From: Octopus sinensis
Taxonomy: Eukaryota
Length of the DNA: 64,000 bases
Assembly (NCBI RefSeq): GCF_006345805.1
Contig: NC_043011.1
Span: 56,680,464-56,744,463 of the forward strand
Direction: 5' to 3'
Position 1 is the stretch's first letter. Each line of letters opens with the position of its first letter. A program made the position numbers and the translations under genes. The notes beneath the pieces were generated by a model that was given only the letters and a program-made list of their open reading frames with translations, did no database searches and was not told the origin of the DNA. Shown one piece after another: positions 1 to 60,963 of this stretch.

Positions 1-539
1 TTTCCAAATGAACTTCTTAGTTTGTATCCCATTATTCAGACATATTTCACTCCATGACTTTGATTAACTCTACAAAATCCAATTTCCAAATTCCATCTGT
101 AGAGTTGACAGCCTCTCAAACTCAGATCTCTCCACTAAACTTCAGACTACTTCTCTCTCAATAACTTGATCTGAAAATGTTAGTTTGATCACAGACAACC
201 GAAGGAGAATATTAACTGTATCAACCTAAGCATCCGTTTCACTCCTCTATATCAAGCAATTCTCGACAAGTTTTCAACAAATAACAACCATTTTGGTTTG
301 GTAAAATCTTAGTTTTTAATTTTAACCATATCATTCAAGGAAATCTAAGTTTTTCTTTTGAGACGTATAAGAAATTACAATGTGTTAAAAAAAAAAAACA
401 GAAATAAGAATGAAAAGATATGATAATATTCTTCGTACATGTTTCTTTTCAAGAATTCTATCTGCAGGAATATGTTTAATATTCTGATTTTATGGGATTA
501 AACAGTTTTGTAAAAGACTATAATTACATGTGCACTCAC

Positions 540-622
540 CTTTTTCTCACATTGCTGTGATAGATTTTCTAATTCTTCCTGCATCACTCTTAACTTTGCT
601 TTTAGAAAACGAATTATGGCTT
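540..622 (-). CDS. TEX9: TEX9 exon (83 nt): [28 protein letters not shown]; gene continues left of the window
   Basis: Acceptor gcatctctttcag, donor GTGAGT; phase 1 to 0. Close to the hallmark TEX9 segment [28 protein letters not shown] (recalled). Confidence 0.93.
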
Positions 623-2243
623 CTGAAAGAGATGCAACCAAATCATTTACAGTAAGCTGTCAATTGTTAACGCCAAAACTAAATGTACATTTTGTTACAT
701 CAGAGAATGCCTGTATTATGGAAACACAAGAGAATAATTGTGTCACAATAAGTCTGTAGTTGCTTTTTATTTATTCAGGTGAATTACAGCTCACTGGCTT
801 TTCACTCTCTGTTTCCTGTGTAGCTGCAAGCTGTACTGACAACATAATGGGCTTACCACCGCCTAGCTTACTTATAACACTCACTTTGACTACCTATCGA
901 TCTGTCTGTCTGCCTGCCTGCCTGTTTGTCTATCTCTGCTTATCTGTCTATTTGTCTGTCTGTCTATCTGTCTATCTGTCTCTGTCTCTCTATCTCTCTC
1001 TCTCTCATACACATCTTCTCTCAGCAATTCTAAATATCTTTGCAAATATTAATTACTTCTGCCAACCACTATGTGCACATCAGGTGGGCACAGAACTGTC
1101 CCCCACCACACACACACACACACACACCTGATTCTAATGATACAAAATTCCCATTTAAAATAACCTAAATTCTAACCGTCCATGAATGACAAAGTTCTTT
1201 CACTAAATTCTTTAATATTTTCAAAATGATTTGCAATGAAGACAAAGTATTTCAATGGAATTATGGTAATAAAAAGGATTTGGAGAACATTTGATAATAA
1301 TTTGATGAAACCAAGTTAAAAAGAACATTTAAAAAAAATTTTTCAAATTTTGGAATTCTGATCTTTAATTTCTTTATTTGTTCCAAAAGCACAGAATGGG
1401 TTATAGTTTGATAAATTCAAATGCAAGAACAGTGATTGATACCCCATTGGAATTGTATTCATGGTGCCAGCATAATAAAAAATTTTCTAGTTTTTGGAGT
1501 CTAGAACCTAATTTCCATAGACAGGAATTTTGAGTGAAAACTCCATGAAGGGTGATATAGCTTGATAAATTCAAATATGAAAATAATGGTTGATACTTTG
1601 ATGGAATCATATTCATGCCAACTTAAAAGAGAAAAATATTCTAAAAACATATTGAAGACACAGGCGTGGGTGAGTGGTTAAGAAGCTTGTTTCACAACCA
1701 GGTGGTCTCGCGTTCAATTCCATTGCATGGTACCTTGGGCAAGAGTCTTTTACTATTGCCTCAGGCTGAACAAAGCTTTGTGAGTAGATTTGGTAGATGG
1801 AAACTGAAAGGATCCCATTTCATATAATGCCTGTATGTTTGTGTATAGCCCTGTCTTGGCATCGTGTAATGGTTGTGTGCCATGAAAAAATATTTTCTTG
1901 CTTAAAAACAGTTGAAGGTTGGTGACAAGAAGGGTATCTGGCTGTAGAAAATCTGCATTAACAAAGTTCATCTGACCCCATTCAAGCATGGAAGAATGGA
2001 TGTTAAAATAATGATGATGATGATGAGGAGAAGGTTAATGAGGAAACAAGAGGTCTAAAGTTTGCAAACTTCCTGTCATTGCTATTTACCAATGCAAACT
2101 GCCACTAGTTTTCTGAGATTCTGCTTTTCTGTCCAACTTCCAAATTTCCAATTTTGCCCCTTGACTGACATGGACTCCATCTCATTGATTGTCAGTGAGA
2201 AAAAGAGGGATAAAAAGAAAAGACAACAGAAGCAAAGTTGTAC

Positions 2244-2443
2244 CTGAGCCTATTTCATTAAGAGTAGGAGGTAGAATATCATCAACTTGCTGTGAGGAGT
2301 CAATAGAAGGGTTCAAATCAGTGTCAGCTTGTTGTTGGTCAGAGATCTGTTGGAAAGTGTCCTGTAGGTCGTTGAGGTACGTTTCATCAGGAACGGCAAC
2401 ATCATCAGCCAGGTTTAATTTTGAACTTGTTGGTTTGGCCCTT
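2244..2443 (-). CDS. TEX9: TEX9 exon (200 nt): RAKPTSSKLNLADDVAVPDETYLNDLQD...DDILPPTLNEIGS
   Basis: Acceptor gtatctttttcag, donor GTACAA; phase 2 to 1. ADDVAVP and DDI...NEIG match recalled human TEX9 ADDVAIP and DDIFSGVSNDIG. Confidence 0.9.
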
Positions 2444-2591
2444 CTGAAAAAGATACATTTAATCACTTGAGTGACAAAGCCCTTTTGCTCTCTCTCTCTA
2501 TATATAAATATAAATAAATAAATATAAAAATATAAATATAATGTATAAAATTTTATTTGATAATTTAAAAATTTCGAATTAATTATTTAAG

Positions 2592-2683
2592 CATCTTACG
2601 ATCGTTTCGCAGAAGAGTTGTCCCTATAATGAAATCCTATATTGATAAGCATTTATAGACAACCCTTCTGCTCTTCAGAGATA
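2592..2683 (-). ncRNA. Minimal type-I hammerhead ribozyme motif with intact core
   Basis: Minus strand: (t)atct-CTGAAGA-GCAGAAGGGTTGTC...GACAACTCTTCTGC-GAA-ACGATCGT-A-agat(g). 14-bp stem II, palindromic stem III, GUA cleavage triplet, 4-5 bp stem I. Confidence 0.8.
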
Positions 2684-2887
2684 TAAAATATGAATATTGT
2701 ATAATATATTGAATGATAATTATTAAAAAAAATTTGAAGTAAAATTGTAAAATGGTGTTTGTTTGAAATGTAAAATAAAAATTAAATATATAAATATTTT
2801 AATAGTATTAAAATTTTTATACAATGGAACACTCAATATAAATTCAGTATATAATATATTCTTATTGAATATATTTACCTAAAGATT

Positions 2888-5090
2888 TATCATCATCATC
2901 ATCATCATCATCATCATTTAACGTCCGCTTTCCATGCTAGCATGGGTTGGACGGTTCAACTGGGGTCTGGGGAGCCCGAAAGCTGCACCAGTCCAGTCAG
3001 ATCTGGCAGTGTTTCTACAGCTGGATGCCCTTCCTAACGCCAACCACTGCGAGAGTGTAGTGGGTGATTTTATGTGCCACCGACACAGGTGCCAGACGAG
3101 GCTGGCAAACGGCCACGCTCGGATGGTGTTTTTTATGTGCACCGACACAGGTGCCAGACGAGGCTGGCAGACGGCCACGCTCGGATGGTGTTTTTATGTG
3201 CCACCGACACAGGTGCCAGATGAGGCTGGCAAACGGCCACGATCGGATGGTGTTTGTTACATGCCCACAGCACGGAGGCCAGTCGATGCGGTACTGGCTA
3301 CGGCCACGTTCGGATGGTTATCTTGTGTGCCACGTGCCACCAGCACTGGTACCACAAAGATACAAATTCCATTGATGTTCATCTATTTTGACTTGTTTTG
3401 ATTTTCACTTGCCTCAACAGGTCTTCACAAGTGTCACAAGAAGGAAGGTATGCACAGGTGGACTGACTACGTCCCAGGTAGGGGCCACAGGTTATGGCCT
3501 GACTAGTCTTGCCGGGTCTTCGGATGGTGTTTTTATGTGCCACCGACACAGGTGCCAGATGAGGCTGGCGAACGGTCACGATCGGATGGTGTTTGTTACG
3601 TGCCCACAGCACGGAGGCCAGTCGGTGCAGTACTGGCTACGGCCACGTTCGGATGGTTTTCTTGTGTGCCACCGGCACTGGTACCACAAAGATACAATTC
3701 CATTAATGTTCATCTATTTTGATTTGTTTTGATTTGATTTGATTTGATTTGTTTTGATTTCATTTTGATTTTCACTTGCCTCAACAGGCCTTCACAAGTA
3801 TCACAAGGAGGAAGGTATGCACAGGTGGACTGACTGCGTCCCAGGTAGGGGCCATGGGATATAGCCTGACTAGTCTTGCCGGGTCTTCGGATGGTGTTTT
3901 TATGTGCCACCGACACAGGTGCTAGATGAGGCTGGCGAACGGCCACGATCGGATGGTGTTTGTTATGTGCCCACAGCACGATGGCCAGTCGATGCGGTAC
4001 TGACTACGGCCACGTTCGGATGGATTCTTGTGTGCCACAGGCACTGGTACCACAAAGATACAAATTCCATTCATGTTCATCTATTTTGATTTGATTTGAT
4101 TTTGATTTTCACTTGCCTCAACAGGTCTTCACAAGTGTCACAAGAAGGAAGGTATGCACAGGTGGACTGACTAGTCTTGCCGGGTCTTCGGAAGGTGTTT
4201 TTTATGTGCCACCGACACAGGTGCCAGATGAGGCTGGCGAACGGCCATGATCGGATGGTGTTTGTTACGTGCCCACAGCACGGAGGCCGGTCGATGCGGA
4301 ACTGGCTACGGCCACGTTCGGATGGTTCTCTTGTGTGCCACCGGCACTGGTACCACAAAGATACAGATTCCATTGATGTTCATCTATTTTGATTTGTTTT
4401 GATTTTGATTTTCACTTGCCTCAACAGCTCTTCACAAGTGTCACAAGAAGGAAGGTATGCACAGGTGGACTGACTACGTCCCAGGTAGGGGCCATGGGTT
4501 ATGGCCTGACTAGTCTTGCCGGGTCTTCGGATGGTGTTTTTATGTGCCACCGACACAGGTGCTAGATGAGGCTGGCCAACGGCCACGATCGGATGGTGTT
4601 TGTCATGCGCCCACAGCACGGAGGCCAGTCGATGCGGTACTGGCTACGGCCACTTTCGGATGGTTTTCTCTTGTGTGCCACCGGCACTGGTACCACAAAG
4701 ATACAAATTCCATTGATGTTCACCTATTTTGATTTTTGATTTGTTTTGATTTGATTTTGATTTTCACTTGCCTCAACAGGCCTTCACAAGTATCACAAGG
4801 AGGAAGGTATGCACAGGTGGACTGACTACGTCCCAGGTAGGGGCCATGGGTTATGGCCTGACTAGTCTTGCCGGGTCTTCGGATGGTGTTTTTATGTGCC
4901 ACCGACACAGGTGCTAGATGAGGCTGGCGAACGGCCACGATCGGATGGTGTTTGTTATGTGCCCACAGCACGATGGCCAGTGATGCGGTACTGACTACGG
5001 CCACGTTCGGATGGATTCTTGTGTGCCACCGGCACTGGTACCACAAAGATACAAATTCCATTGATGTTCATCTATTTTGATTTGTTTTGA
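2888..5090 (-). repeat. Tandem array derived from an RTE LINE 3' end: about six 300-370 bp units containing ~60-bp subrepeats
   Basis: The marker gatacaaattcc recurs at about 3359, 3691, 4057, 4360, 4700 and 5048. (CAT)n tail at 2888-2917. The same sequence is contiguous with RTE ORF2 at 58620-60300. Confidence 0.85.
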
Positions 5091-5336
5091 TGCCCCCTAA
5101 GAAGGTGTTAACCAGTAACTTACTGGTTCAGCAAATGAAGACTTATCGAAGAAATACTAGACTTAAAAATGAAATAAATACTGGGGTTGATTTGTTTAAC
5201 TAAAACTATTCAAAGTGGTGCCCCAGCATGGCCACATTCCAATGACTGAAACAAATAAAAGTCAAAAAAATTAAAGAGAGAATCCAAACAAATGAAGTTG
5301 GAAAAAGAAAAAGGAAAATGAAATAAAATTCCTTAC

Positions 5337-5407
5337 GTGGACGAGACTTTGTGTTTTGTTGAGTTTTGTTGATGTGGAGAAACGCTTGGTTTTGCTGCAG
5401 AGTTCAT
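5337..5407 (-). CDS. TEX9: TEX9 exon (71 nt): MNSAAKPSVSPHQQNSTKHKVSS(T)
   Basis: Acceptor ttctacttcttctcataaccag, donor GTAAGG; phase 0 to 2, matching the next exon. Confidence 0.82.
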
Positions 5408-6747
5408 CTGGTTATGAGAAGAAGTAGAAAAGAATTGAGTGAAGCTGCTAAAGTTTAACATGGAAAATCAAATAATGAATAGCAGAAACATCTTCAATAG
5501 ACGTAGAAACCAGTTGTATTTTTATGTGTAAATGCTCTCTAAGAAGTGAAGGCACATGGCTCTGTGGTTATAGCGTCAAGCTTATGATCGTGAGGTTGTG
5601 AGTTTGAATCCCGGACGGGGCTGCATGTTGTGTTCTTGAATAAGACACTTTATTTCACATTGCTCCAGTTCACTCAGCCGTAGAAATGAGTTGCGACATC
5701 ACATGTGCCAAGCTGTATCGGCCTTTGCTTTTCCCCTGGATAACACTGGTAGCATGGAGAGGGGAGGCTGGCATGCATGGGCGACTGCTGGTCTTCCATA
5801 AAAAATGCAACCTTGCCCAGACTTGTGCCTGGGAGGGTAACTTTCTAGGTGTAATCCCATGGTCAGTCATGACTGAAGGGGGTCTCAGCCCTCTAAGATG
5901 AGCCTCTGTTGTTCATCATGGGGCAGACCGGCTTCAGTTTCAAGAGTGCAATTTTAACTGAGAGACTTTCTTAAATTATTGCTAATTTATAAAGTAAAGT
6001 TATGTCTGATAAAAGAGTTCTCACAAAGAGAACTATTTGATATAAATATTGGTAATAATAATAGTACTGCCTAACTAGCCCTTGTGCCGGTGGCACATAA
6101 AAGCACCCACTACACTCTGGGAGTTATGGGCATTAGGAAAGGTATCAAGCTGTAGAAACTCTGCCAGATCAGATTGAAGCCTGGTCCAGCCATCTGGCTT
6201 GCCAGTCCTCAGTCAACCCATCCAACCTATGCCAGCATGGAAAGTGGACATTAAACAATGAATAAGGATAATAATAATTCTTTCTACTGGAAGCACAAGG
6301 CCTCAAATTTGGGGGAAGGGATTAAGTCGATTACATCGACCCCAGTGAGTAACTGTTACTTATTTCATCTACCCCAAAAAGTTGAAAGGCAAAGTTGACC
6401 TCGGCGGAATTTGAATTCCTAATGTAGTGACAGACGAACTACTGGTATCCATTTCGCCTGGTTTACTAAAAATGTTGCCACCTCACCACCTTAATAATAA
6501 TAATATTAGTCAGATAAAAAGGAAGGAATTGTTCCTTTATTTATTTAGAGATTCAGAAAGCCTTCAAAATTTTCCAAGCATTTGAAATGGATTGGAAAGA
6601 AATAAAATAAAGAAAAATAAAGTAAAAAAAACTTTATTTACTTTCTGTACCTCTATGGAAATAGTTTTTTTTTTACATTATTTTTCTTTATTTAGTTTTA
6701 TTTCATTCTTATTTCATTTCCTTAGGAAATTTAGACTTTCTGTGCCT

Positions 6748-6779
<32 letters not shown>

Positions 6780-6924
6780 AGACTAAGGAGCAATTCTCTC
6801 ATTTCTTCTGACTGACCTTTATTGTATGTATGTATGTATGCATGCATACACACATGCAAGAATGCATGTATATGTGTATATATAATTAGCTTATTTCAGC
6901 TAATTATATATACACATATACATC

Positions 6925-7352
6925 AGCTTTATTCTTTTACTCTTTTATTTGTTTCACTCATTTGAGTGTGGCCATGCTGGAGCACCGCCTTTAGTCGAGC
7001 AAATTGATTCCAGGACTTATTCTTTATAAGCCTAGCACTTATTGTATCAGTCTCTTTTGCTGAACCACTAAGTTACAGGGACGTAAACACACCAGCATCG
7101 GTTGTCAAGCAATGTTGGGGGGGGGGACAACACAGGCACACAAACATATATACACACACACATACATATATATATATATACATATATATGACGGGCTTCT
7201 TTCAGTTTCCATCAACCAAATCTACTCACAAGGCTTTGGTCAGCCCGAGGCTATAGTAGAAGACACTTGGCCAAGGTGTCACGCAGTGGAACTGAACCCG
7301 GAACCATGTGGTTCGTAAGCAAGCTACTTACTACACAGCCACTCCTATGCCT
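6925..7352 (-). mobile_element. tRNA-head SINE (dominant family), full length
   Basis: Head ggctgtgtagtaagtagcttgctt..ccacatggttccgggttcagttccactgcgtgacacc. Other copies at about 1657, 9270, 10530, 12034, 18640, 21400, 22104, 31160, 33445, 34700, 43380, 50460, 52440 and 61700. Confidence 0.85.
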
Positions 7353-7432
7353 ATATCAACAACTATTTCCGTATTTCATCCACCCACACTGAAATAAATC
7401 ATGTCAGACAATGAACAAAATTCATATTTTAC

Positions 7433-7505
7433 CTTTGACTGAGACTTCGAGGCAGATACACCATAATCTCCTGCATCATCACCAAAATCCTCATCCTCAA
7501 GGTCT
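7433..7505 (-). CDS. TEX9: TEX9 exon (73 nt): DLEDEDFGDDAGDYGVSASKSQSK
   Basis: Acceptor cattgacag, donor GTAAAA; phase 2 to 0; open frame. Confidence 0.82.
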
Positions 7506-7544
7506 CTGTCAATGAATATTATCATATATATCTATCTATATATA

Positions 7545-7830
7545 CATTTGAAATTTACAAAAAAACAAAAGACTAAGACAGGTTTATTAACAACAAGCAG
7601 GTGTATTAGTTTGACACTCAGGAAAGTGAGAAAGTCTTTTATGTTTTGAGCCTATGCTCTTCAACAGAAAGTAATAAGAGAAAATAGAGAGAGAATAAAA
7701 AAACTTGTGGATTTAGCGATCAATCATGGCAACTGGTTGGAAAAAGGTAGTTGGACAGGAGAGCTAGGAAGAAGGGGAGATAATAAAGTACTGGTGCTCC
7801 CAAAATGAAGGTGTGTATGTGTGAGAATGT
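7545..7830 (-). mobile_element. Related hammerhead-bearing repeat in a TEX9 intron
   Basis: Same layout and the same downstream motif as 60500-60720; TA-rich flanks. Confidence 0.4.
7636..7671 (-). ncRNA. Decayed hammerhead motif (core mutated)
   Basis: cttt-CTGTTGA-A-GAGC(atag)GCTC-AAA-ACAT-A-aaag. Stems I and II intact; core altered, with two changes consistent with CpG decay. Confidence 0.5.
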
Positions 7831-7992
7831 GTAAGTGTATGCATGTGGATATATATATATATATATTTATATACATGAATAATTTAGATACAGACAAGAT
7901 AAAACATAGAATGAAGACATCAGCAAACTATGTACAGGTTGCATGGAAGTGCTTAACAAAACTTATACAGGATCCACATCCTGTTAATTTAA

Positions 7993-8200
7993 CCTATCAA
8001 GTCCCACTGTCCTATAAATAGGACACTGAGAATGTTAAATAAGCTGTATCACATTGTCTCAGTGTCCTATTTATAGGACACCGAATATTTCAATTTCTAC
8101 TTGAAGTAAAGGAGTTTTAATAATTAATTTTTTTCATTTTAAAATCTGTAAAAATTTAAAAGTAATATTCAAACATTTAAGTATTCTGGGACTTAATGGG
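7993..8200. mobile_element. piggyBac-type MITE (TTAA target)
   Basis: ttaa|cctatcaagtccca ... tgggacttaatggg|ttaa; internal inverted repeats. Confidence 0.7.
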
Positions 8201-8796
8201 TTAAAAGAGAATGAATGCACAAGACAAAGTAGATTTTCTTGTCCTCCTCCTCCTCTCTACCACCACCACCACCACCACAATGATCATCATCTTTTAACGT
8301 CCATATTCCATGCTGGCATGGGTGGAATGGTGTGACCGGATTCAATGGATCAAAGAACAGCATCACGTCCTACTGTTTGCTTTAGTTTCTACAGCCAGAT
8401 ATCTAATTTTCTAATGCCAACCACTTTGCAGAGTGCATTGGGTGCCTTTTCCATGGTACCAGCACTAGTGAGGTCATCACTTTCAACTGTGTAAGACCAC
8501 AGTAGAGAAAGGGGCAGGTTTATTTTAGGAGATAAGGAGAAGTATGAGGGGCCAAGGAGTAGCCAGAAGGAAACAAAAATAGAGGTGATGAGATGTGATG
8601 GTGGACCCTCAAGGTGAGAGAGGACAGGAGGATAGGGAGTGGATGGGTGAGAAGAGGGTGCATGAGTGTATGGGGAGAGTGAGAGGCGGTCAGAGATAGG
8701 GCATGGGTGGAGACAGGATGGTTATGGCTGAAGTATTTTAGATCAGAAATCAACTTGACCAGGGTTGACCCAGGGCTAAAAAACAACAAAACTTAC

Positions 8797-8906
8797 TGTA
8801 GAAATTCATCAGGGTTTATATGATCCAGCAAGTTGGATGTGATGTGTGATGTTTCCAGATTAATTAAACCAACTCTACTCTCTGAAACATCCACGGGTTG
8901 ATCTTT
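8797..8906 (-). CDS. TEX9: TEX9 exon (110 nt): KDQPVDVSESRVGLINLETSHITSNLLDHINPDEFL(Q)
   Basis: Acceptor ttatgtttctttgcag, donor GTAAGT; phase 0 to 2, which exactly bridges the flanking exons. Confidence 0.82.
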
Positions 8907-9855
8907 CTGCAAAGAAACATAAAACCAAACTTTTAATTCTTTTATGAAACTGTGGCCATGCTGGGTTTCAGACCATCACCGCCACCATCACCACCACCAC
9001 TATCATCATCATCATTATCAGTAACAGCAGCATCATTTCAGTGTTCACTTTTCCATGGTGGCAAAGGCCAGATGGAACTTGTTGAGGTGGGATTTTCTAC
9101 AGACAGATACCGTTCCAGTCACTCAACCCTCACCTGTTCCCAGGCAAGGTAGCATTTCCCCATAACCAGACATGTTTTCATGGAAGTTAGAAATGATTGC
9201 CTGCATGATGGTGATACTCGTTTACAACCATCATGTTAAAGCAAGGAAATAATAACATACGCACACACTCACGCACACAACAGGCTTCTTTCAGTTTCCA
9301 CCGACCAAATCCACTCACAAGTAGATTTGATCAGTGGAAACCGAAAGAAGCTTGAGGCTATAGTAGAAAACACTTGGCCAACATGTCATGCAGACAAACT
9401 GAATGTGGAACCATGTGGCTGGGGATTAAATTTCTTACCACATAGCCATGCCTGCACCTATACACCTCTGTGTCTATATGTACATGTGTGTGTGTGTGTA
9501 TACATTTGTTATGTGTAAACAGACATGGAACAGCACCAGTTTCAATATTTTGTCTCAGAGAAACTTCCAAAAGAGATGTTTGTATTAAAAGATATGGCTT
9601 TGATTAGAAGCCTGTTGGAAGTGTTGTGACCTGAGGAAGCCATCAGTTTCTCAGACAGAAAGAGTCTTGTGAGACTGCAAAGACAGGGTTCCATTTCAAT
9701 ACTAGAAATATTACACATGGCAAGGTTAGTCACTTGCCATACAACCCTCCGCTGTAGCATTCCTGCAAACTGGCATTTTGGTTAACCATTCTTTGCAACG
9801 ATTCCTGTAAGGAGGCCAGGAATTTGCATGGAATATTTGCAAACATATCACTCAC

Positions 9856-9919
9856 TATTAGTCCCTCGGCTTCTCTAACCAAATAAGCAGTCCGAGCTTC
9901 AAGTTCCGCATTCAGTTCT
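9856..9919 (-). CDS. TEX9: TEX9 exon (64 nt): (Q)ELNAELEARTAYLVREAEGLI
   Basis: Acceptor cattttctttaccag, donor GTGAGT; phase 2 to 0. Similar to human TEX9 [21 protein letters not shown] (recalled). Confidence 0.9.
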
Positions 9920-10656
9920 CTGGTAAAGAAAATGAAATATCAGTTATTACAGTAAAATAAATATCAGATATGTAACAGAATATTTAAGACATGTCAGATA
10001 CATAATACAATATGAGTAAATATCAGATATAGGGCAGTGAGCTGGCAGAATCATTAGCATGCCAGGCAAATTGTTTCAGTCTTAAGTAAATAAGTACTAG
10101 AGGTAAATGGTATTCCAGTGAGGGTCTTATTTGACTTATTGTAACATTATATGGCATTAGAAGATGATCAGAACAATCCTCTTCCTCATTATTGGTTAAG
10201 TGTTGGAATTATGAAACAGCATGGAAGAGCCATTTTAGCAATCACCATCGTCATCATTACCATCGCTGTCATCATCATCATTTTAACGCCCTTTTCCATG
10301 CTTGCATCGGTCAAAGTTTGTTGAGACAGATTTTCTATGGCGAGATGCCATTCCTGTCACCAGCAGTGACCTCCTGCTTTCAAGCCAGGTGATATTCCCC
10401 CATTGCCAGGCATTTTCTCACAGAATATTGGAAATGAACAATACTGCTTGTATAACAGTGACACTCTTTTACAACTATCACATAATGTCATGACAAGGAG
10501 ACACAAACATACACAACAGTCATATATATACATATATGACAGGTTTCCTTCAGTTTTCCATCTACTAAATTCACTGACAAAGCTTTGGTCAACTTGGAAC
10601 TGTAGTAGAAGAGACTTATTTGCCCAAGGTGCCATGCAGTAGGACCGAACCTGAAA

Positions 10657-10854
10657 CCTTGAAGAATTTTTAGTCGAATGAATTGAGACCAGCCCTTCTT
10701 TTCTTTTTTTTTAAAGCCTGGTGCTTATTCTATCTGTTCCTTTTGCTGAACCACTAAGTTAACTCATGAACTAATCACAATACACAATCCTTCCTACCCA
10801 TCTCATCGTCTTTCTGGAATCTCCTGCTATTTGGCTGCTATTTCATGTACATCA
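10657..10854 (+). repeat. 198-bp direct copy of 11409-11606 inserted inside a SINE
   Basis: About 96% identity by eye; interrupts the SINE motif gaaacc|atgtggttgggaagc. Confidence 0.9.
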
Positions 10855-11149
10855 TGTGGTTGGGAAGCAGACTTCTTAACCAAAAAGCCACACCTGCATC
10901 TATTTGACAGACTTTGTGTATCAAAATATTCACCCCCCCTCCCTGCCTGCTCTCCCCAATCTGGTTACTCGTTCACTGAAGTGTGATGGAAATTTTGACA
11001 CTTCAAGAAATAAATGAAAAGTGAATTTAACAGTTTTTGTGTGATTTTAGATGGTTAAAAGTGTTGCTTCCATAATGTAATTGCTTCTGTTTCAACATCT
11101 GGTCCCTGACCGAATCATCTGCCAGACAAATACAACTCTGAAGTTTCAA

Positions 11150-11190
<41 letters not shown>

Positions 11191-12033
11191 TAGCATTGAA
11201 GTTCCTGTCAAAGACTGAGCTTACGGATTTACTTCTACTACAGACCTGGCAACAACACACGTATGAAAATACCTTGGAAGTTTCTATTCGTTAGCTAATG
11301 ATGTTAAAACAAAGAAATACCACTGTTAGATTACAGAAGAAATATATATATATATATAATCTTTCTTTTAGTTGTTTAAGTCATTAGACTGGCCATGCTG
11401 GAGTAGTGCCTTGAAGAATTTTTAGTCGAATGAATTGAGACCAGCCCTTCTTTTCTTTTTTTTTAAAGCCTGGTGCTTATTCTATCTGTTCCTTTTGCTG
11501 AACCACTAGGTTAACTCCTGAACTAATCACAATACACAATCCTTCCTACCCACCTCACCATCTTTCGGGAATCTCCTGCTATTTGGCTGCTATTTCATGT
11601 ACATCAAGTGACCACATAGCAGCTCTATGGCTGGCTTCTGTAGCCATTGGCTCATTCATATCTACATAAATATTTGTCAGTCTTTGTGAAGTTTGTAAGA
11701 AACGACAGAACTCTATCTGCAAATTGTTTACAATTTGTTCATTAAAACTTTGTGACCTTGTTGGTTGTTGTTTCGCTCAATCAAATGTGAACAAAGAATC
11801 CAGAGGTTAGAAATTATGAACTTGATATTATTTGTAACTTGAAGGTTTTCATCTCAAAATTACTTCACAGAAACATTAAATGTTTTCATACATAGAAACT
11901 AATTAATTTGCAAAATATACACTCGCTTACGTAATCAAAAATATAACGATTACAAAAGTGAGAACTGAATTGACAAAAGAGAGAAGGTGTTTATACCATT
12001 TGCTCATGGATGTTTAGTTTCAATCCACTGAAG

Positions 12034-12412
12034 GGGCTGGCATGGCTGTGTGGTAAGAAGCTTGCTTCCCAACCACATGGTTCTGGGTTCGGTCACACTG
12101 CATGGCATCTTAGTATCTTCTACTTTAGCCTCAGCCCAACCAAAGCTTTGTGAGTGCATTCGGTAGATGGAAACTGAAAGAAGCTTATTGAATGTATGGA
12201 TGTGTGTGTGTATGTTTGTGTCTGTGCTTGTTCCCCACCACCATCACCATTTGATAACCAATGTTGGTGTGTTTTCATCCCCATAACTTAGCAGTTCAGC
12301 AAAAGAGACTGATAGAATAAGTACCAGGCTTAAAACCTAAGTCCTGGGATCGATTCATTCGACTGAAAATTCTTCAAGGTGGCGCCCCAGCATGGCCACA
12401 GTCTCATGACTG
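12034..12412 (+). mobile_element. tRNA-head SINE (dominant family)
   Basis: Same head and body; ends ...ggccacagtctcatgactga. Confidence 0.85.
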
Positions 12413-12483
12413 AGAGAGAGAGAGAAAGAGAGAGAAAAGACAAAACCTAAAATAAATCGGGACTGCTGAAAGAATCGACTCAC

Positions 12484-12599
12484 TGATACAGTTTTTCTTT
12501 GTCAATTAAATCATTGGTGTCTTTTTTGCTTTTAGTTCCTGACTTCTTTGAGGTAGAATTAGTTCTTTTACGAGCTGGAGCGGGAGGAGGAAGAGGCAT
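12484..12599 (-). CDS. TEX9: TEX9 orthologue, first clear coding exon (exon 12484-12620; ATG at 12599): MPLPPPAPARKRTNSTSKKSGTKSKKDTNDLIDKEKLY(Q)
   Basis: Acceptor ttcttttgtgttctttcag at 12621 and donor GTGAGT at 12483; ends in phase 2. DLIDKEKLYQELNAEL matches vertebrate TEX9 DLLALEEEYKRLNAEL as I recall it. The frame is open to the exon start (THPGIFS), so an upstream coding exon is possible. Confidence 0.85.
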
Positions 12600-14123: not shown

Positions 14124-15811
14124 AAAAAAGATAGCAGAGAAATGTGCAGAGAAGGTTAAACTGAAATAAATTCTGCCAACCGACAGCAGCCAGTTTTGGG
14201 GTCTGAGAGGAGATTTTGGTGCTGTTCTACTCTTAATCCACTGTTGAGTATTTAGTGGTTGCGAAGAGATCCAGTTGAGAAAAGCAATTGTTCCAACAAA
14301 ATACAGAAATACAAATTAGCCAAAATAAAATAAAATAAACGAGCATGAGAGATTGATTGGAGAAGGAAAATACAAAACAAAACGAAATTTTAACCAATTA
14401 GAAGAATATTTTGATTAACAAATTCTAAATCACCTCATGCTCCCTCGTTATAGCACTCTTTGATCGTGGAATACTTTTAGTTAAAACATCAAAAAATTTA
14501 TAATAATATTATACTTTCATTAAAGATGTTTTATTGCATAAGATCTTAATTATGAGATCTTAATTAATTAAATGTATTCTATAATTTCCTTATGACATTA
14601 CACCGTTCAAACGTAACATAACACTATGAATGTCTCCTCACATTTCCATTGAAGTATTGGGTTAATGATTCGTACTGACATTATATATTTCATTCTTTAA
14701 TCATGAGACTGTGGTCAGGCTGGAGCACTGCACTCAACATGTTATTGAACCTAAGTACTTCTTTCAGTTTTCTTTTTTTATTGATCCTTGTTTATCAAGT
14801 AGCTGAGTGACATTTTTTTTATGCAACATCAGCCTTTTATCCAATGGTGTTGTGTCAGAGACAGACACTGGACTGTGGCCATACTGGAGCACTCACAAAG
14901 GGTTTTGGTAGAATAGCTCAACTCTTGATTTTTAAGCCTTGTACTTACTCTGTTGGTCTTTTTTGCTAAACCCGAATGTTATGGGGACATAAAAATGAAC
15001 CAACACTAGTGTCAAGCTATAGGTTGACACATATATGTGTGTGTGTGTATACATTCATATACATATGAGAGGACCTTGTCTTGCAAGGTACTTGGTAGCC
15101 CCATGGGGGGGGGTCTGGTACTACATAAAAAAGCATGCAGTACACTCTGTGAAGTGGTTGGCATTAGGAAGGGCATCCAGCCATAGAAACCATGCCAAAA
15201 TAGACAATGAAATCTGATGCAGCTCTCCAGCTTGCTGCTCCTATCAAACTTTCCTACCTGTACCAGCATGGAAAGCAGATGCTAAATGATGATGATGATG
15301 ATGATGATGATGGCAACAATGATGATGATGATGAGTGGTAATGTGATGGAGGGGTGTTGTGGAGAAATTCTTTTTGATTAAATTTGGGGTTACATTATTG
15401 TTCAGAGTTTATTCCTGTATAAAGAACTTTGTAAAAGTGTATATTTAGATGTGTCAGTTACAGGTCATGGGATTTATATATGAATTTCAATTTGTGTATA
15501 TCATTGGAAGAATTTTATCCTTTTTTTTTCTTAGATATTAAACACTCCTACAGAGGGAGAGTTTCTGACAACTAATTTCATAGATAACTTCAGTCAGTTG
15601 AAGCTTCTGAACTCACAATTATTATATATGTATCTATGGTATGCTTACTTTCTCAACTCTGGATGAGAAAAATAAAGTAAATTGCAGTTGGATTTGAACC
15701 TTGAACCTAAAAAGTCATAAATAAATACCACAAAAGCATAGTGTCTAGCACTCAAAACCATTCTGCCAATGGACAAGTCTAATTTTAAAATGTTTCAATG
15801 AAGTTTTATTT

Positions 15812-25853: not shown

Positions 25854-25913
<60 letters not shown>

Positions 25914-26236
25914 TAACATTTGTTTTCTATACTGGTATGGGTTGGACAGTTTGACAAATGGCTGTGGAGAGGTTGGGTAACTCTGCTCATAGGTAAAAAT
26001 TTTCTCCCATTCAAACCTGAAATTCCTCACTAATGAAATTTTAAAAAGCAAAAGGAGAAAATGGTTTAAGTATTAAAACCAAAGCAGAACTGTATTTGGC
26101 AGATTATAAATAACCCATCATGCCATCTATTTTGATCCTCATGATGGTGAGCCTGATGTTCTAACCACTGAGCCATGTGCCTTCACTACAATATATATAT
26201 ATAAGAGTGATTATACTTTGAACGTATATCTACTAT

Positions 26237-33432: not shown

Positions 33433-35258
33433 ATTTATATATAGACAGCAATGGCTGTGTGGCTAAGATGCTCACTTTATAACCCTGTGGTTTCAGGTTC
33501 AGTCCCATAGTGCAGCACTTCGGGCAAATGTCTTCTACTATAGTCCCAGGTGGACCAATGAGTTGTGAGAGAATTTGGGAGATGGAAACTGTGTGGAAGC
33601 CCATCATATGTTTGTGTCTGCATTTACATTCACCCATAACCTGACAACTGGATTTACTTTGCTTACGTACCTGTAACTTAGCAGTGTGGCAAAAGAAACT
33701 GATAAAATAAGTGCCAGACTTGAAACTACTAAGTACTGGTGTGTATTTGTTTGACTAAAACCCTTCAAGGCAGTGCTCCAGCATGGCCTCGGGCTAATGA
33801 CTGAAAGAAGTAAAAAATATAAAATAATACTCAACCTATTAAATATGATAAGCCTAACTTATCAAAACCTCAAACCGATTCCTTCCAAATCCTCTTCTTT
33901 GATGGTCAACAGTTTCAGTCATCATCATCATTATCATCATCATCATTGTTTAACGTCTGTTTTCCACGCTAGCACAGGTTGGACGGTTCGACCGGGGTCT
34001 GGGAAGCCAGGGGCTGCTCCAGGCTCCAGTCTGATCTGGCAGAGTTTCTACGGCTGGATGCCCTTCCTAACGCCAACCACTCCGCGAGTGTAGTGGGTGC
34101 TTTTTACGTGCCACCTGCACAGGTGCCAGGGGGGGGGGGTCCGGCATCGGTCACGATCGGTTGGAGCTTTTAACGTGCCAGCGGCACGGAAGCCAGCTAA
34201 GGCGGCGCTGGCAACGTTCGGATGGTCTTTTTATGTGCCACCGGCACAGGAGCCAGTCGGGGCGGCGCTGGCATCGGCCACGTTCGGATGGTGCTTTTTA
34301 TGTGCCACCGGCACAGAAGCCAGTTTCAATCTTATGTAATAATGATTTCCAATTTGCCTACAACTCTACAAATCTGGATGAACGTGTATTGTCGATGGAA
34401 TCAGCGTTAGTAATTTGGCTGATGTTTATTTGGAAATTGGAGTCAACAGATTTTATCAGTTTAACATCTAAAAGCTAATTAGAAATAATTCTGTGACGAG
34501 GAAAAGACATTAGTGTTATTTTAATCACTTTTGCAATTATGGGAGAAAACTCCGCATATATTCCATTGTTATTAGACCTCCTCAACAAGGCATACACTTT
34601 ACTGCACATATTGAAGTGGTGAGCGGGGAGAACATTAGAGGTGTGCAGTTTTGTAGAGGAGTCGATGTGGAACAAACACAAAGACACACACTCATAAATG
34701 TATATGACAAGTTTCCGCACAGTTTCCGTCTACCAAATTCACTCACTAGGCATTGGTCAGTAGAACCTTCCCAAGGTGCCACGGTTGCTAAGTGACTACA
34801 GCCATGCCTGCGCCTATATATTTATATTATTTGTGTAAGAAAATCTGGAGGAATGAGATTCAACGTCGACTCAGTCAAGATTTGAACTCAGAACATAAAG
34901 GGCCGTAGCTAAAGACCATCATATATTCCCCTTTTGCACGCTAAACAGATTCTGTAAACCCGTCGTTCGTTCAATATTACCAAAATAAACAGAAGGGATT
35001 TCGGAATGAAATCCGATGCAAGCCAAATCCTAATCCGCGATGAGACTCACGTGTGTTAAAACGGTCTCATAATTTGGTGAATGGTTCTGGTAATATATTG
35101 TTAAACATGGAGAGAACACTTGGTTGATTGTCTCTGATTTTTATAACATTCTTTGTAATCTGATCGTTTCACTTTGCCCAAAAGTGTAAACAATCTATTC
35201 ACCTCTCAGTCATCGGCTAACCAATAATATATTGATTATGTATATATATATATATATA

Positions 35259-44588: not shown

Positions 44589-44893
44589 GACATACATACA
44601 TGTGCATATACATACACCTACACACATCCAAAAAAAAAAAATTCGAGCGAGGTCATTGCCAGTACCACCTGACTGGCCCCCGTGCCAGTGGCACGTAAAA
44701 GCACCCACTACACTCTTGGAGTCGTTGGCGTTAGGAAGGGCATCCAGCTGTAGAAACTCTGCCAGATCAAGACTGGAGCCTGGTGCAGCCATCTGGTTCA
44801 CCAGCCCACAGTCAAACTGTCCAGCCCATGCTAGCATGGAAAGTGAACGTTAAACAATGATGATGGTGATGATATATACATGTGCATACACCT

Positions 44894-57414: not shown

Positions 57415-57789
57415 GAAATAACTTGAAAAGTAATTTAATCGCACTTCTAGTGCCATTTGAATGTGGCTGATGCCAGTGCTGCCTTGACTGGCTTCCATGC
57501 CAGTGGCACTTAAAAAGCACCAACTGATCGTTGTCTCCTCTGGCCTCTGTGTCAGTGGCACATAAAAAGCACCCACTACACTCTCGAAGTGGTTGGCGTT
57601 AGGAAGGGCTTCAAGCTGTAGAAACATTGCCAGATCAGATTGGAGCCTGGTGCTGCTTCCGGGCTTCCCAGACCCCGGTCGAAGCATCCAACCCATGCCA
57701 ACATGGAAAAACGGACGTTAAATCCTGATGATGATGATGATGATGATGATGCTAACACAGGAAGGACACAGTAATGACTTGTAAGCTTT

Positions 57790-60753: not shown

Positions 60754-60963
60754 CTGGTGGCACGTAAAAAGCACCTCCTACGCTCTCAGAGTGGTTGATG
60801 TTAGGAAGGGCATCCAGCTGTAGAAACATTGCCAGATCAGATTGGAGTCTGGTGCGGCCTCCTGGCTTGCCTGTCCCCAGTCAAACCATCCAACCCATGC
60901 CAGCATTGAAAAGGGACGTTAAATGATGATTATGATGATATGCACTTTCATATAGTTGAGCTA

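What the first reader, a model, noticed from the sequence alone, without database searches (positions are those of the whole stretch)
2592..2683. Intact hammerhead ribozyme motif on the TEX9 sense strand, ~150 nt upstream of a 3' splice site
Seen: the minus strand reads stem I (t)atct, CUGAAGA, a 14-bp stem II (GCAGAAGGGUUGUC/GACAACUCUUCUGC, extending into a further bulged hairpin), GAA, ACGAUCGU, A, then agau(g). All conserved core positions (C3-A9, G10.1:C11.1, G12-A14, A15.1:U16.1, H17) are present. Predicted cleavage is after GUA, between 2597 and 2596. Established: minimal type-I hammerheads with short palindromic helix III occur in Penelope-like elements and metazoan retrozymes or satellites, and cleave best as dimers. 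Inference: this copy is transcribed in TEX9 pre-mRNA close to the acceptor at 2444, so it could cut the intron co-transcriptionally, affect splicing or yield defined intronic or circular RNAs. The long rod-like stem II is unusual for this minimal class.
Basis: partly seen in the sequence, partly recalled or inferred. Interest (0 to 1): 0.85.

Follow-up and report, generated by a model that had tools for sequence, protein, structure and literature searches.

The report
Hammerhead ribozyme in an octopus repeat
The motif is a real, intact hammerhead self-cleaving RNA motif, but it is one of several hundred copies carried by a mobile-element family in the octopus genome that happened to land in a TEX9 intron, so it is an ordinary transposon relic and not a TEX9-specific device.

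Summary
On the minus strand at 2683-2592 every conserved hammerhead core position is present. Helix I has 4-5 bp, helix II 15 bp and helix III 2 bp with a palindromic GAUC loop. Predicted cleavage is at 2597|2596. A descriptor scan finds only this site in the window and none in 200 shuffles. No Rfam hammerhead model detects it.

The genome is Octopus sinensis. The site lies in intron 5 of TEX9, in sense, 152 nt upstream of the exon-6 acceptor.

It is not gene-specific. The motif belongs to a non-coding retroelement of about 1 kb with roughly 350-400 recognisable copies, variable 5' truncation, (TA)n targets and inverted partial copies, all Penelope-like insertion features. The window holds a fragment (2499-2789) plus an inverted 3'-terminal piece (2781-2890). 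The same insertion, with an identical ribozyme, is in O. vulgaris TEX9.

The ribozyme block is the best-conserved part between subfamilies (2/92 against 28/273 differences). However, the more numerous subfamilies carry U at 11.1, and copies show no covariation. Folding predicts an inactive monomer and a favoured double-hammerhead dimer, and TEX9 holds no second copy. Efficient cleavage of the TEX9 intron is therefore unlikely. It is a new member of a known kind, of modest interest.

The parts
2592..2683 (-). Complete minimal type-I hammerhead motif. Helix I is 2683-2679 with 2596-2592. The core is 2678-2672 and 2608-2606. Helix II is 2671-2657 with 2623-2609. Helix III is 2605-2598. A17 is 2597. 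Predicted cleavage is at 2597|2596.
   Evidence: Sequence read. The descriptor scan gave 1 hit against 0 in 200 shuffles. The motif is identical to the subfamily A consensus, 0/92 differences.
2624..2656 (-). Distal bulged hairpin that extends helix II into a 63-nt rod.
   Evidence: MFE structures. Its sequence is as conserved between subfamilies as the catalytic core.
2499..2789 (-). Fragment of the hammerhead-bearing non-coding retroelement, whose full length is about 1 kb. It is 5'-truncated about 95-135 nt upstream of the core. It lacks the last roughly 150 nt plus the terminal module, and ends in (TA)n/(GA)n.
   Evidence: BLAST and alignments against 29 other genomic copies.
2781..2890 (+). 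Inverted copy of the element's 117-nt 3'-terminal module ('T'). It lies head-to-head with the forward fragment.
   Evidence: T matches L001 1697-1806 at 95%. T has at least 561 genomic candidates and follows hammerhead copies on the same strand elsewhere. The same inverted arrangement occurs at L004, L029 and L014.
2444..5336 (-). TEX9 intron 5 (GT 5336-5335, AG 2445-2444), which contains the insertion.
   Evidence: Exon mapping with the O. sinensis TEX9-like protein.
2244..2443 (-). TEX9 exon 6, immediately downstream of the hammerhead-containing intron.
   Evidence: 100% tblastn match to residues 146-211 of P0001. It joins in frame with exon 622-540.

Best explanation
The site is an intact copy of a minimal type-I hammerhead ribozyme. 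It belongs to a dispersed, non-coding, AT-rich retroelement family of about 1 kb in Octopus sinensis. A rearranged fragment of that element inserted into a (TA)n microsatellite in TEX9 intron 5 before O. sinensis and O. vulgaris separated. The fragment consists of an inverted 3'-terminal piece plus a 5'-truncated forward piece.

Shown:
- The motif, its coordinates and its improbability by chance.
- Membership of a multi-copy family with variable 5' ends and a shared 3' part.
- Presence at the orthologous O. vulgaris site.
- Sense orientation in TEX9.
- Stronger conservation of the 92-nt ribozyme block than of its flanks between subfamily consensus sequences.

Inferred:
- The element is mobilised by Penelope-like elements, whose insertions have these hallmarks.
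- The ribozyme, if it serves anything, serves the element's RNA and acts as a double hammerhead. In that form two RNAs pair through the palindrome ACGAUCGU and swap helix I strands.
- In TEX9 pre-mRNA the single copy would cut only rarely, after pairing in trans with another family transcript.
- Occasional intron cleavage would have little effect on TEX9 splicing.
For: Motif and chance:
- Sequence read; descriptor scan gave 1 hit against 0 in 200 shuffles.

Family:
- The 116-nt query has at least 663 first-look candidates, and 41 scored copies are 97-100% identical.
- A 24-mer inside helix II occurs 344 times at up to 2 mismatches, with 0 in the control.
- The exact 25-mer of the 3' half occurs 133 times.
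- 5' ends are scattered from -28 to about -570 while the 3' parts are shared.
- No ORF was seen: no long homologous frame in the 30 copy-bearing loci.

Penelope-like hallmarks, as described in PMC8557442:
- Inverted 5'-truncated copies upstream (window, L004, L029, L014).
- (TA)n on both sides of the O. vulgaris insertion.

Architecture:
- Short helix I, enlarged helix II and a 2-bp helix III with a palindromic loop, matching the Penelope-like-element hammerheads of PMC4209133.
- The genome holds many classical hammerheads of that type and thousands of GIY-YIG candidates with frames up to 883 aa.

Orthology:
- Window 2890-1 aligns to O. vulgaris TEX9 locus L061 44790-47696 at 97.2%, and the ribozyme is identical.

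Constraint:
- Consensus A against B shows 2/92 differences in the ribozyme block and 28/273 in flanks (Fisher p=0.014).

Dimer:
- Monomer MFE is -30.0 kcal/mol in a non-hammerhead fold. The hammerhead fold is -25.5. The homodimer double hammerhead is -65.8.

Splicing:
- A slow-cleaving hammerhead placed in an intron left splicing intact in vivo; only a fast ribozyme blocked it (work summarised in PMC2995048).
- In Xenopus about 43% of related hammerhead-bearing repeats lie in introns.
Against: - No Rfam hammerhead model detects the site. A likely cause is the 53-nt insertion in helix II. This genome's own long-helix-II variants lose about 14-17 bits relative to the best short one.
- No autonomous partner was found. 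None of 30 GIY-YIG loci has a hammerhead or any similarity to the element within 1.5 kb.
- In the flank-selected sample, 20 of 35 copies carry U at 11.1 (G.U instead of G-C). The 14 copies with C at the eighth helix II pair (subfamily B) also have a C/U mismatch there. They still multiplied, so a perfect ribozyme may not be needed.
- Copy number does not jump at the cleavage site: 344 copies of a 24-mer before it and 391 after it. There is therefore no sign that cleaved RNAs were the usual templates.
- No covariation in 33 copies.
- Penelope-like-element hammerheads cleave poorly in vitro.
- Activity was not and could not be tested here.
Confidence: 0.78

Rival explanations
1. The copy has been co-opted by TEX9. 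It cuts intron 5 co-transcriptionally and thereby tunes splicing or mRNA yield, or produces defined intronic or circular RNAs.
For: It is intact, in sense, and 152 nt from the acceptor. There are 0 differences in 92 nt against the subfamily consensus while the flanks differ at roughly 3-10%. It is identical in O. vulgaris while the surrounding alignment is 97.2% identical. Intronic ribozymes with gene-level effects are known, for example CPEB3 (PMC10919898).
Against: It is one of hundreds of near-identical copies. The zero-substitution count is subject to ascertainment, because only intact copies get flagged. About 2.6 changes would be expected between the two species, which is not significant. 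The monomer is predicted inactive and there is no partner copy in the gene. A slow ribozyme in an intron does not disturb splicing.
Confidence: 0.06
2. The conserved unit is the 63-nt rod hairpin itself, for example a recognition structure for the mobilising reverse transcriptase or a source of small RNAs. On this reading the hammerhead core is a relic that no longer cleaves.
For: The distal hairpin and its loops are as conserved between subfamilies as the core, which a ribozyme alone does not require. The major subfamilies have U11.1 and a helix II mismatch. There is no jump in copy number at the cleavage site. Only weak miRNA-like Rfam noise hits fall on the hairpin.
Against: All 13 core nucleotides, helix I and the palindromic helix III are also invariant between subfamily consensus sequences. 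The youngest subfamily has the canonical G10.1-C11.1 pair. The stem is only 15 bp with a bulged tip, which is not a typical miRNA precursor.
Confidence: 0.12
3. The motif is a chance resemblance to a hammerhead in AT-rich intronic sequence.
For: No Rfam hammerhead hit. Helix I is short and AU-rich.
Against: There were 0 matches in 200 shuffles of the whole window on both strands. The motif is shared by hundreds of copies. The helix III 8-mer ACGAUCGU also occurs in an Rfam-detected hammerhead of this genome, L038.
Confidence: 0.02

Closest known systems
Minimal hammerheads of Penelope-like elements (Cervera and de la Pena 2014, PMC4209133; Lunse et al. 2017, cited from memory)
   Same: Type I topology. 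Helix I of 4-5 bp without a recognisable loop 1. Enlarged helix II and G10.1-C11.1. Helix III of 2 bp capped by a palindromic tetraloop, which permits a double hammerhead. Many copies per genome. Carried by a retroelement with 5' truncation, inverted partial copies and a preference for (TA)n.
   Different: Helix II has 15 bp plus a 33-nt distal hairpin, against 6-8 bp. [quoted passage not shown] The carrier is a non-coding element of about 1 kb, and no pseudo-LTR next to an RT/GIY-YIG frame was found.
Metazoan non-LTR retrozymes (Cervera and de la Pena 2020, PMC7229834; Li et al. 2026 preprint 10.64898/2026.07.22.740005)
   Same: Non-autonomous, low-GC, hammerhead-bearing repeats proposed to depend on Penelope-like elements. 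Monomer copies are dispersed and often intronic.
   Different: Retrozymes are tandem repeats of 170-400 bp, each unit carrying a canonical hammerhead with loop-loop contacts, and are expressed as circular RNAs. Here copies are dispersed and up to about 1 kb. Only one tandem pair was seen among the places listed, with 431-nt spacing. No loop 1/loop 2 contact is evident.
Newt satellite 2, axolotl and Schistosoma repeat hammerheads
   Same: A weak helix III with a palindromic loop. Poor cleavage as single motifs and efficient cleavage as dimers.
   Different: Those sit in tandem satellites, so the partner motif is on the same transcript. The TEX9 copy has no partner in cis.
[quoted passage not shown]
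   Same: Sense-strand hammerhead inside an intron of a protein-coding gene.
   Different: Those are single or few-copy, deeply conserved, stable as monomers and have Rfam models. This one is a repeat copy, was tested only in a sibling species, depends on dimer formation and is not detected by Rfam.

Membership tests
Hammerhead ribozyme, type I | Conserved core C3 U4 G5 A6 N7 G8 A9, G12 A13 A14, and H17 not G | tested here: met
   CUGAAGA at 2678-2672, GAA at 2608-2606 and A17 at 2597; descriptor hit.
Hammerhead ribozyme, type I | Three helices around the core, with G10.1:C11.1 and A15.1:U16.1, and helix I open | tested here: met
   Helix I has 4 Watson-Crick pairs plus 1 G.U. Helix II has 15 bp starting with G:C. 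Helix III is A:U, C:G and a GAUC loop.
Hammerhead ribozyme, type I | Match to a curated covariance model (Rfam RF00163, RF00008, RF02275-7) | tested here: not met
   No hammerhead hit at gathering score or at E<=10. The family is also absent from the 65 RF00163 hits in the genome.
Hammerhead ribozyme, type I | Site-specific self-cleavage after H17 | not testable with these tools
   Needs transcription and cleavage assays. An indirect test, a jump in copy number at the cleavage site, gave 344 against 391, so no signal.
Hammerhead ribozyme, type I | Helices supported by compensatory changes among relatives | tested here: inconclusive
   In 33 copies, 94.2% of cells are paired against 94.4% in shuffles, with one double change. 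Mean column identity is 95%, too uniform to decide. Four of the five helix II states that differ between subfamilies keep pairing.
Penelope-like-element minimal hammerhead | Short helix I, enlarged helix II, and helix III of 1-2 bp with a palindromic loop (dimer design) | tested here: met
   The cofold predicts the double hammerhead at -65.8 against 2 x -30.0 kcal/mol.
Penelope-like-element minimal hammerhead | [quoted passage not shown] | tested here: not met
   A9 is followed directly by G10.1, which pairs with C11.1.
Penelope-like-element minimal hammerhead | Location in the pseudo-LTR of an element that encodes RT and GIY-YIG endonuclease | tested here: not met
   The carrier has no ORF. 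Thirty GIY-YIG loci show no hammerhead and no similarity within 1.5 kb. Only insertion hallmarks link it to these elements.
Non-LTR retrozyme | Tandem repeats of 170-400 bp, each unit with a hammerhead | tested here: not met
   Copies are dispersed. One same-strand pair 431 nt apart was seen among the listed places.
Non-LTR retrozyme | Expression as linear and circular RNAs | not testable with these tools
   No transcript data are available.
Conserved intronic hammerhead (HH9/HH10 type) | Single-locus conservation across distant species | tested here: inconclusive
   Present and identical in O. vulgaris, a sibling species 2.8% diverged here. More distant octopods could not be examined.

The most novel reading that the evidence does not exclude
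The sense-oriented, perfectly preserved copy 152 nt upstream of the TEX9 exon-6 acceptor has been co-opted. In tissues where family transcripts are abundant, it would pair in trans through the ACGAUCGU palindrome, cut intron 5, and so couple TEX9 output to transposon expression.
Probability: 0.04. Interest if true: 0.7.

Novelty: new member of a known kind. Interest (0 to 1): 0.3.

Why it matters
Minimal dimer-type hammerheads in animal retroelements are well documented. I found no description of them in octopus. The only paper that mentions both terms in a relevant way concerns Penelope-like elements in general, and a detailed 2026 O. vulgaris repeat annotation does not mention ribozymes.

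The family offers three things. It is a compact example of a hammerhead whose helix II has grown into a 63-nt rod. Its subfamilies differ at the normally invariant 10.1-11.1 pair. It is also a natural case of a single ribozyme copy in the sense strand of an intron.

For TEX9 itself the finding is probably of no consequence.

Tried and rejected
- Rfam at three stringencies found no hammerhead. I did not build a covariance model of my own. The other hammerheads of this genome are nearly one sequence family, so a model built from them would test sequence and not fold. A model that included the query family would be circular.
- I searched for the autonomous partner through GIY-YIG loci. There are many loci, but none is linked to the element.
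- I looked for reverse transcriptase or endonuclease frames next to hammerhead loci. Only low-complexity frames turned up.
- I tried to fetch 40 loci selected by the 3'-terminal module, to map 5' ends relative to the cleavage site. I replaced it with k-mer counts on either side of the site, which showed no jump.
- The covariation test on 33 copies gave no signal.
- Chance occurrence was rejected.
- Classification as a tRNA-derived SINE was rejected by inspection: the 5' end is AT-rich with no tRNA-like part. This was not formally tested.

Full report
OBSERVATION

The minus strand of the window between 2683 and 2592 reads UAUCU-CUGAAGA-G[CAGAAGGGUUGUCU ... GGACAACUCUUCUG]C-GAA-A-C-GAUC-G-U-A^AGAUG. 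All conserved hammerhead positions are present:
- C3-A9 at 2678-2672.
- G10.1:C11.1 closing a 15-bp helix II (2671-2657 with 2623-2609, two G.U pairs).
- G12-A14 at 2608-2606.
- A15.1:U16.1 and C:G around a GAUC loop at 2605-2598.
- A17 at 2597.
- A helix I of four Watson-Crick pairs plus a terminal U.G (2683-2679 with 2596-2592).

A descriptor with these requirements finds this one site on both strands of the window and none in 200 dinucleotide-preserving shuffles. The stretch folds with z = -4.3. No Rfam hammerhead model reports the site, at gathering score or at E<=10 in searches of 401 and 121 nt. The genome's own hammerheads with about 60 nt inserted in helix II score 31-34 bits against 48 bits for the best short one. 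An insertion penalty of that size, together with different helix sequences, plausibly explains the miss. It remains a failed membership test.

GENE CONTEXT

Two minus-strand exons, 2443-2244 and 622-540, have canonical splice sites and join in frame. Their product matches 'testis-expressed protein 9-like isoform X2 [Octopus sinensis]' at 100%, and TEX9 of other molluscs, echinoderms and vertebrates at 41-53%. With that protein, seven exons map to 12599-540 on the minus strand. The motif lies in intron 5 (5336-2444), in sense, 152 nt upstream of the acceptor.

IT IS A REPEAT COPY

- The 116-nt stretch has at least 663 first-look candidates in the 2.72-Gb genome. The 41 copies scored are 97-100% identical.
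- A 24-mer inside helix II occurs 344 times at up to two mismatches, with 0 in the control.
- The exact 25-mer CUUCUGYGAAACGAUCGUAAGAUGC occurs 133 times.
- Alignment of 30 loci shows that the family extends about 570 nt upstream and about 330 nt downstream of the core. 5' ends are scattered between -28 and -570, and the 3' part is common. This is the pattern of target-primed reverse transcription.
- In many copies the 3' end continues into a 117-nt module, T, which itself has at least 561 candidates.
- The full element is therefore about 1 kb, AT-rich and without a reading frame.

The window holds only -95/-135 to +180 of the element (2789/2814 to 2499). Directly upstream is an inverted copy of T (2781-2890, plus strand). 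The same head-to-head arrangement occurs at L004, L029 and L014. At the orthologous O. vulgaris site the insertion is bounded by (TA)n on both sides.

Craig et al. list these as hallmarks of Penelope-like elements: inverted 5'-truncated copies, insertion into (TA)n, and hammerheads near the 3' end (PMC8557442). The link to those elements is an inference. The genome has thousands of GIY-YIG candidates with frames up to 883 aa, but none of the 30 loci examined contains a hammerhead or any similarity to this element within 1.5 kb.

AGE AND ORTHOLOGY

- Window 2890-1 aligns to the O. vulgaris TEX9 locus (L061 44790-47696) at 97.2%. The insertion is at the same place and the ribozyme is identical. 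The insertion therefore predates the split of the two species.
- About 2.6 differences would be expected in 92 nt at that divergence, so zero is not significant.
- Against the subfamily consensus the copy has 0/92 differences in the ribozyme, and 20/202 in the flanks as computed. By hand from the alignment, leaving out the junction and the poly-A tract, the flank figure is roughly 3-5%.
- With the clock used for O. vulgaris repeats (PMC13282606), the hand estimate suggests an age of the order of 10-15 million years.
- Because only intact copies attract notice, I do not read the zero count as selection at this locus.

IS THE RIBOZYME MAINTAINED IN THE FAMILY?

A sample chosen by a flanking query, not by the ribozyme, resolves four subfamilies:
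- A (the window's): G.U at the eighth helix II pair, and C11.1.
- A2: G-C at that pair, and a G.U at the fourth pair.
- B: a C/U mismatch at that pair, and U11.1.
- C: A-U at that pair, and U11.1.

Consensus A and consensus B differ at 2 of 92 positions in the ribozyme block and at 28 of 273 in the flanks (Fisher p=0.014). No core, helix I or helix III position differs between the consensus sequences. This argues for constraint on the source copies.

Three observations weaken the case for a strictly required ribozyme:
- The conserved block includes the distal hairpin and its loops.
- The more numerous subfamilies have G.U at 10.1-11.1, roughly 60% of the exact 25-mers.
- Subfamily B also has a mismatch in helix II.

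Among 33 copies there is no covariation beyond shuffles. Counts of 24-mers just before (344) and just after (391) the cleavage site give no sign that cleaved RNAs were frequent templates.

HOW IT WOULD WORK

- Helix III is only two pairs with a tetraloop.
- The monomer's minimum-energy fold (-30.0 kcal/mol) pairs the 5' strand of helix I with the helix III and cleavage-site region. The hammerhead fold is 4.5 kcal/mol worse.
- Two molecules together are predicted to form the classical double hammerhead, with an intermolecular 8-bp helix III (ACGAUCGU, -10 kcal/mol) and swapped helix I strands, at -65.8 kcal/mol.
- This is the behaviour described for newt, axolotl and Penelope-like-element hammerheads, and the last of these cleave poorly even as dimers in vitro.
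- TEX9 contains no second copy, neither in the window nor in the whole O. vulgaris gene. Cleavage of the pre-mRNA would therefore need pairing in trans with another family transcript.
- Published work summarised in PMC2995048 shows that a slow hammerhead placed in an intron leaves splicing intact, and that only a fast ribozyme aborts it.
- In Xenopus about 43% of related hammerhead repeats lie in introns.
- I therefore expect at most rare cleavage and no appreciable effect on TEX9.

COMPARISON AND VERDICT

The motif works like the minimal hammerheads of Penelope-like elements and shares their architecture. It differs in three ways: helix II is extended to 15 bp plus a distal hairpin, there is no bulge after A9, and its carrier is non-coding.

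It is not a retrozyme in the defined sense, because the copies are dispersed and not tandem. It is not comparable to the deeply conserved intronic hammerheads of amniotes.

It is a new member of a known kind.

Noticed in passing
window 2889-2950, and about 15 further places such as 57688-57750, 15265-15312, 33921-33982, 25884-25945, 44821-44873, 60890-60942: The 3' end of another high-copy repeat (ccaacccatgctagcatggaaagcggacgttaa) followed by an (ATG)n tail. It is probably one of the abundant octopus SINEs. It abuts the inverted T module in O. sinensis.
   Followed up: no
window 3068-5083: A GC-rich tandem array with units of 62, 303, 352 and 367 bp. The whole stretch 2890-5090 is missing from the orthologous O. 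vulgaris intron, where 23 bp separate the flanks. Intron 5 is therefore about 2.2 kb longer in O. sinensis. Similar sequence flanks other loci (L003, L023).
   Followed up: partly
genome loci L031-L060 (for example G000:C13:29988995-29989039): A classical minimal hammerhead family (GUAC CUGAAGAG ACCC AGAA YGGGU CGAAA CAUGUGUY GUAC). Eight copies are above the Rfam RF00163 cut-off. Three relatives (L038, L047, L054) carry about 60 nt inserted in helix II, and L038 has the same helix III 8-mer ACGAUCGU as the window motif.
   Followed up: partly
genome: About 60% of the family copies with an otherwise exact 3' half have U instead of C at position 11.1. This gives a G10.1.U11.1 wobble at a pair that is almost invariant in known hammerheads. 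The change is fixed in whole subfamilies and is not scattered CpG decay.
   Followed up: partly
G000:C5:121106654 and 121107085 (same strand); G000:C2:24529836-24529883; G000:C9:3956686-3956958: One tandem pair of family hammerheads 431 nt apart, and several back-to-back inverted pairs. These could supply a partner motif in cis and would be the best loci for testing dimer cleavage.
   Followed up: no
genome: At least 4846 first-look GIY-YIG candidates, several inside open frames of 600-883 aa without stops. This suggests recently active Penelope-like or Naiad-type elements. No hammerhead lies within 1.5 kb of the 30 best.
   Followed up: partly
window 12600-64000: TEX9 occupies only 1-12599 of the window, and its last exons lie beyond coordinate 1. 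The remaining 51 kb upstream was not examined.
   Followed up: no
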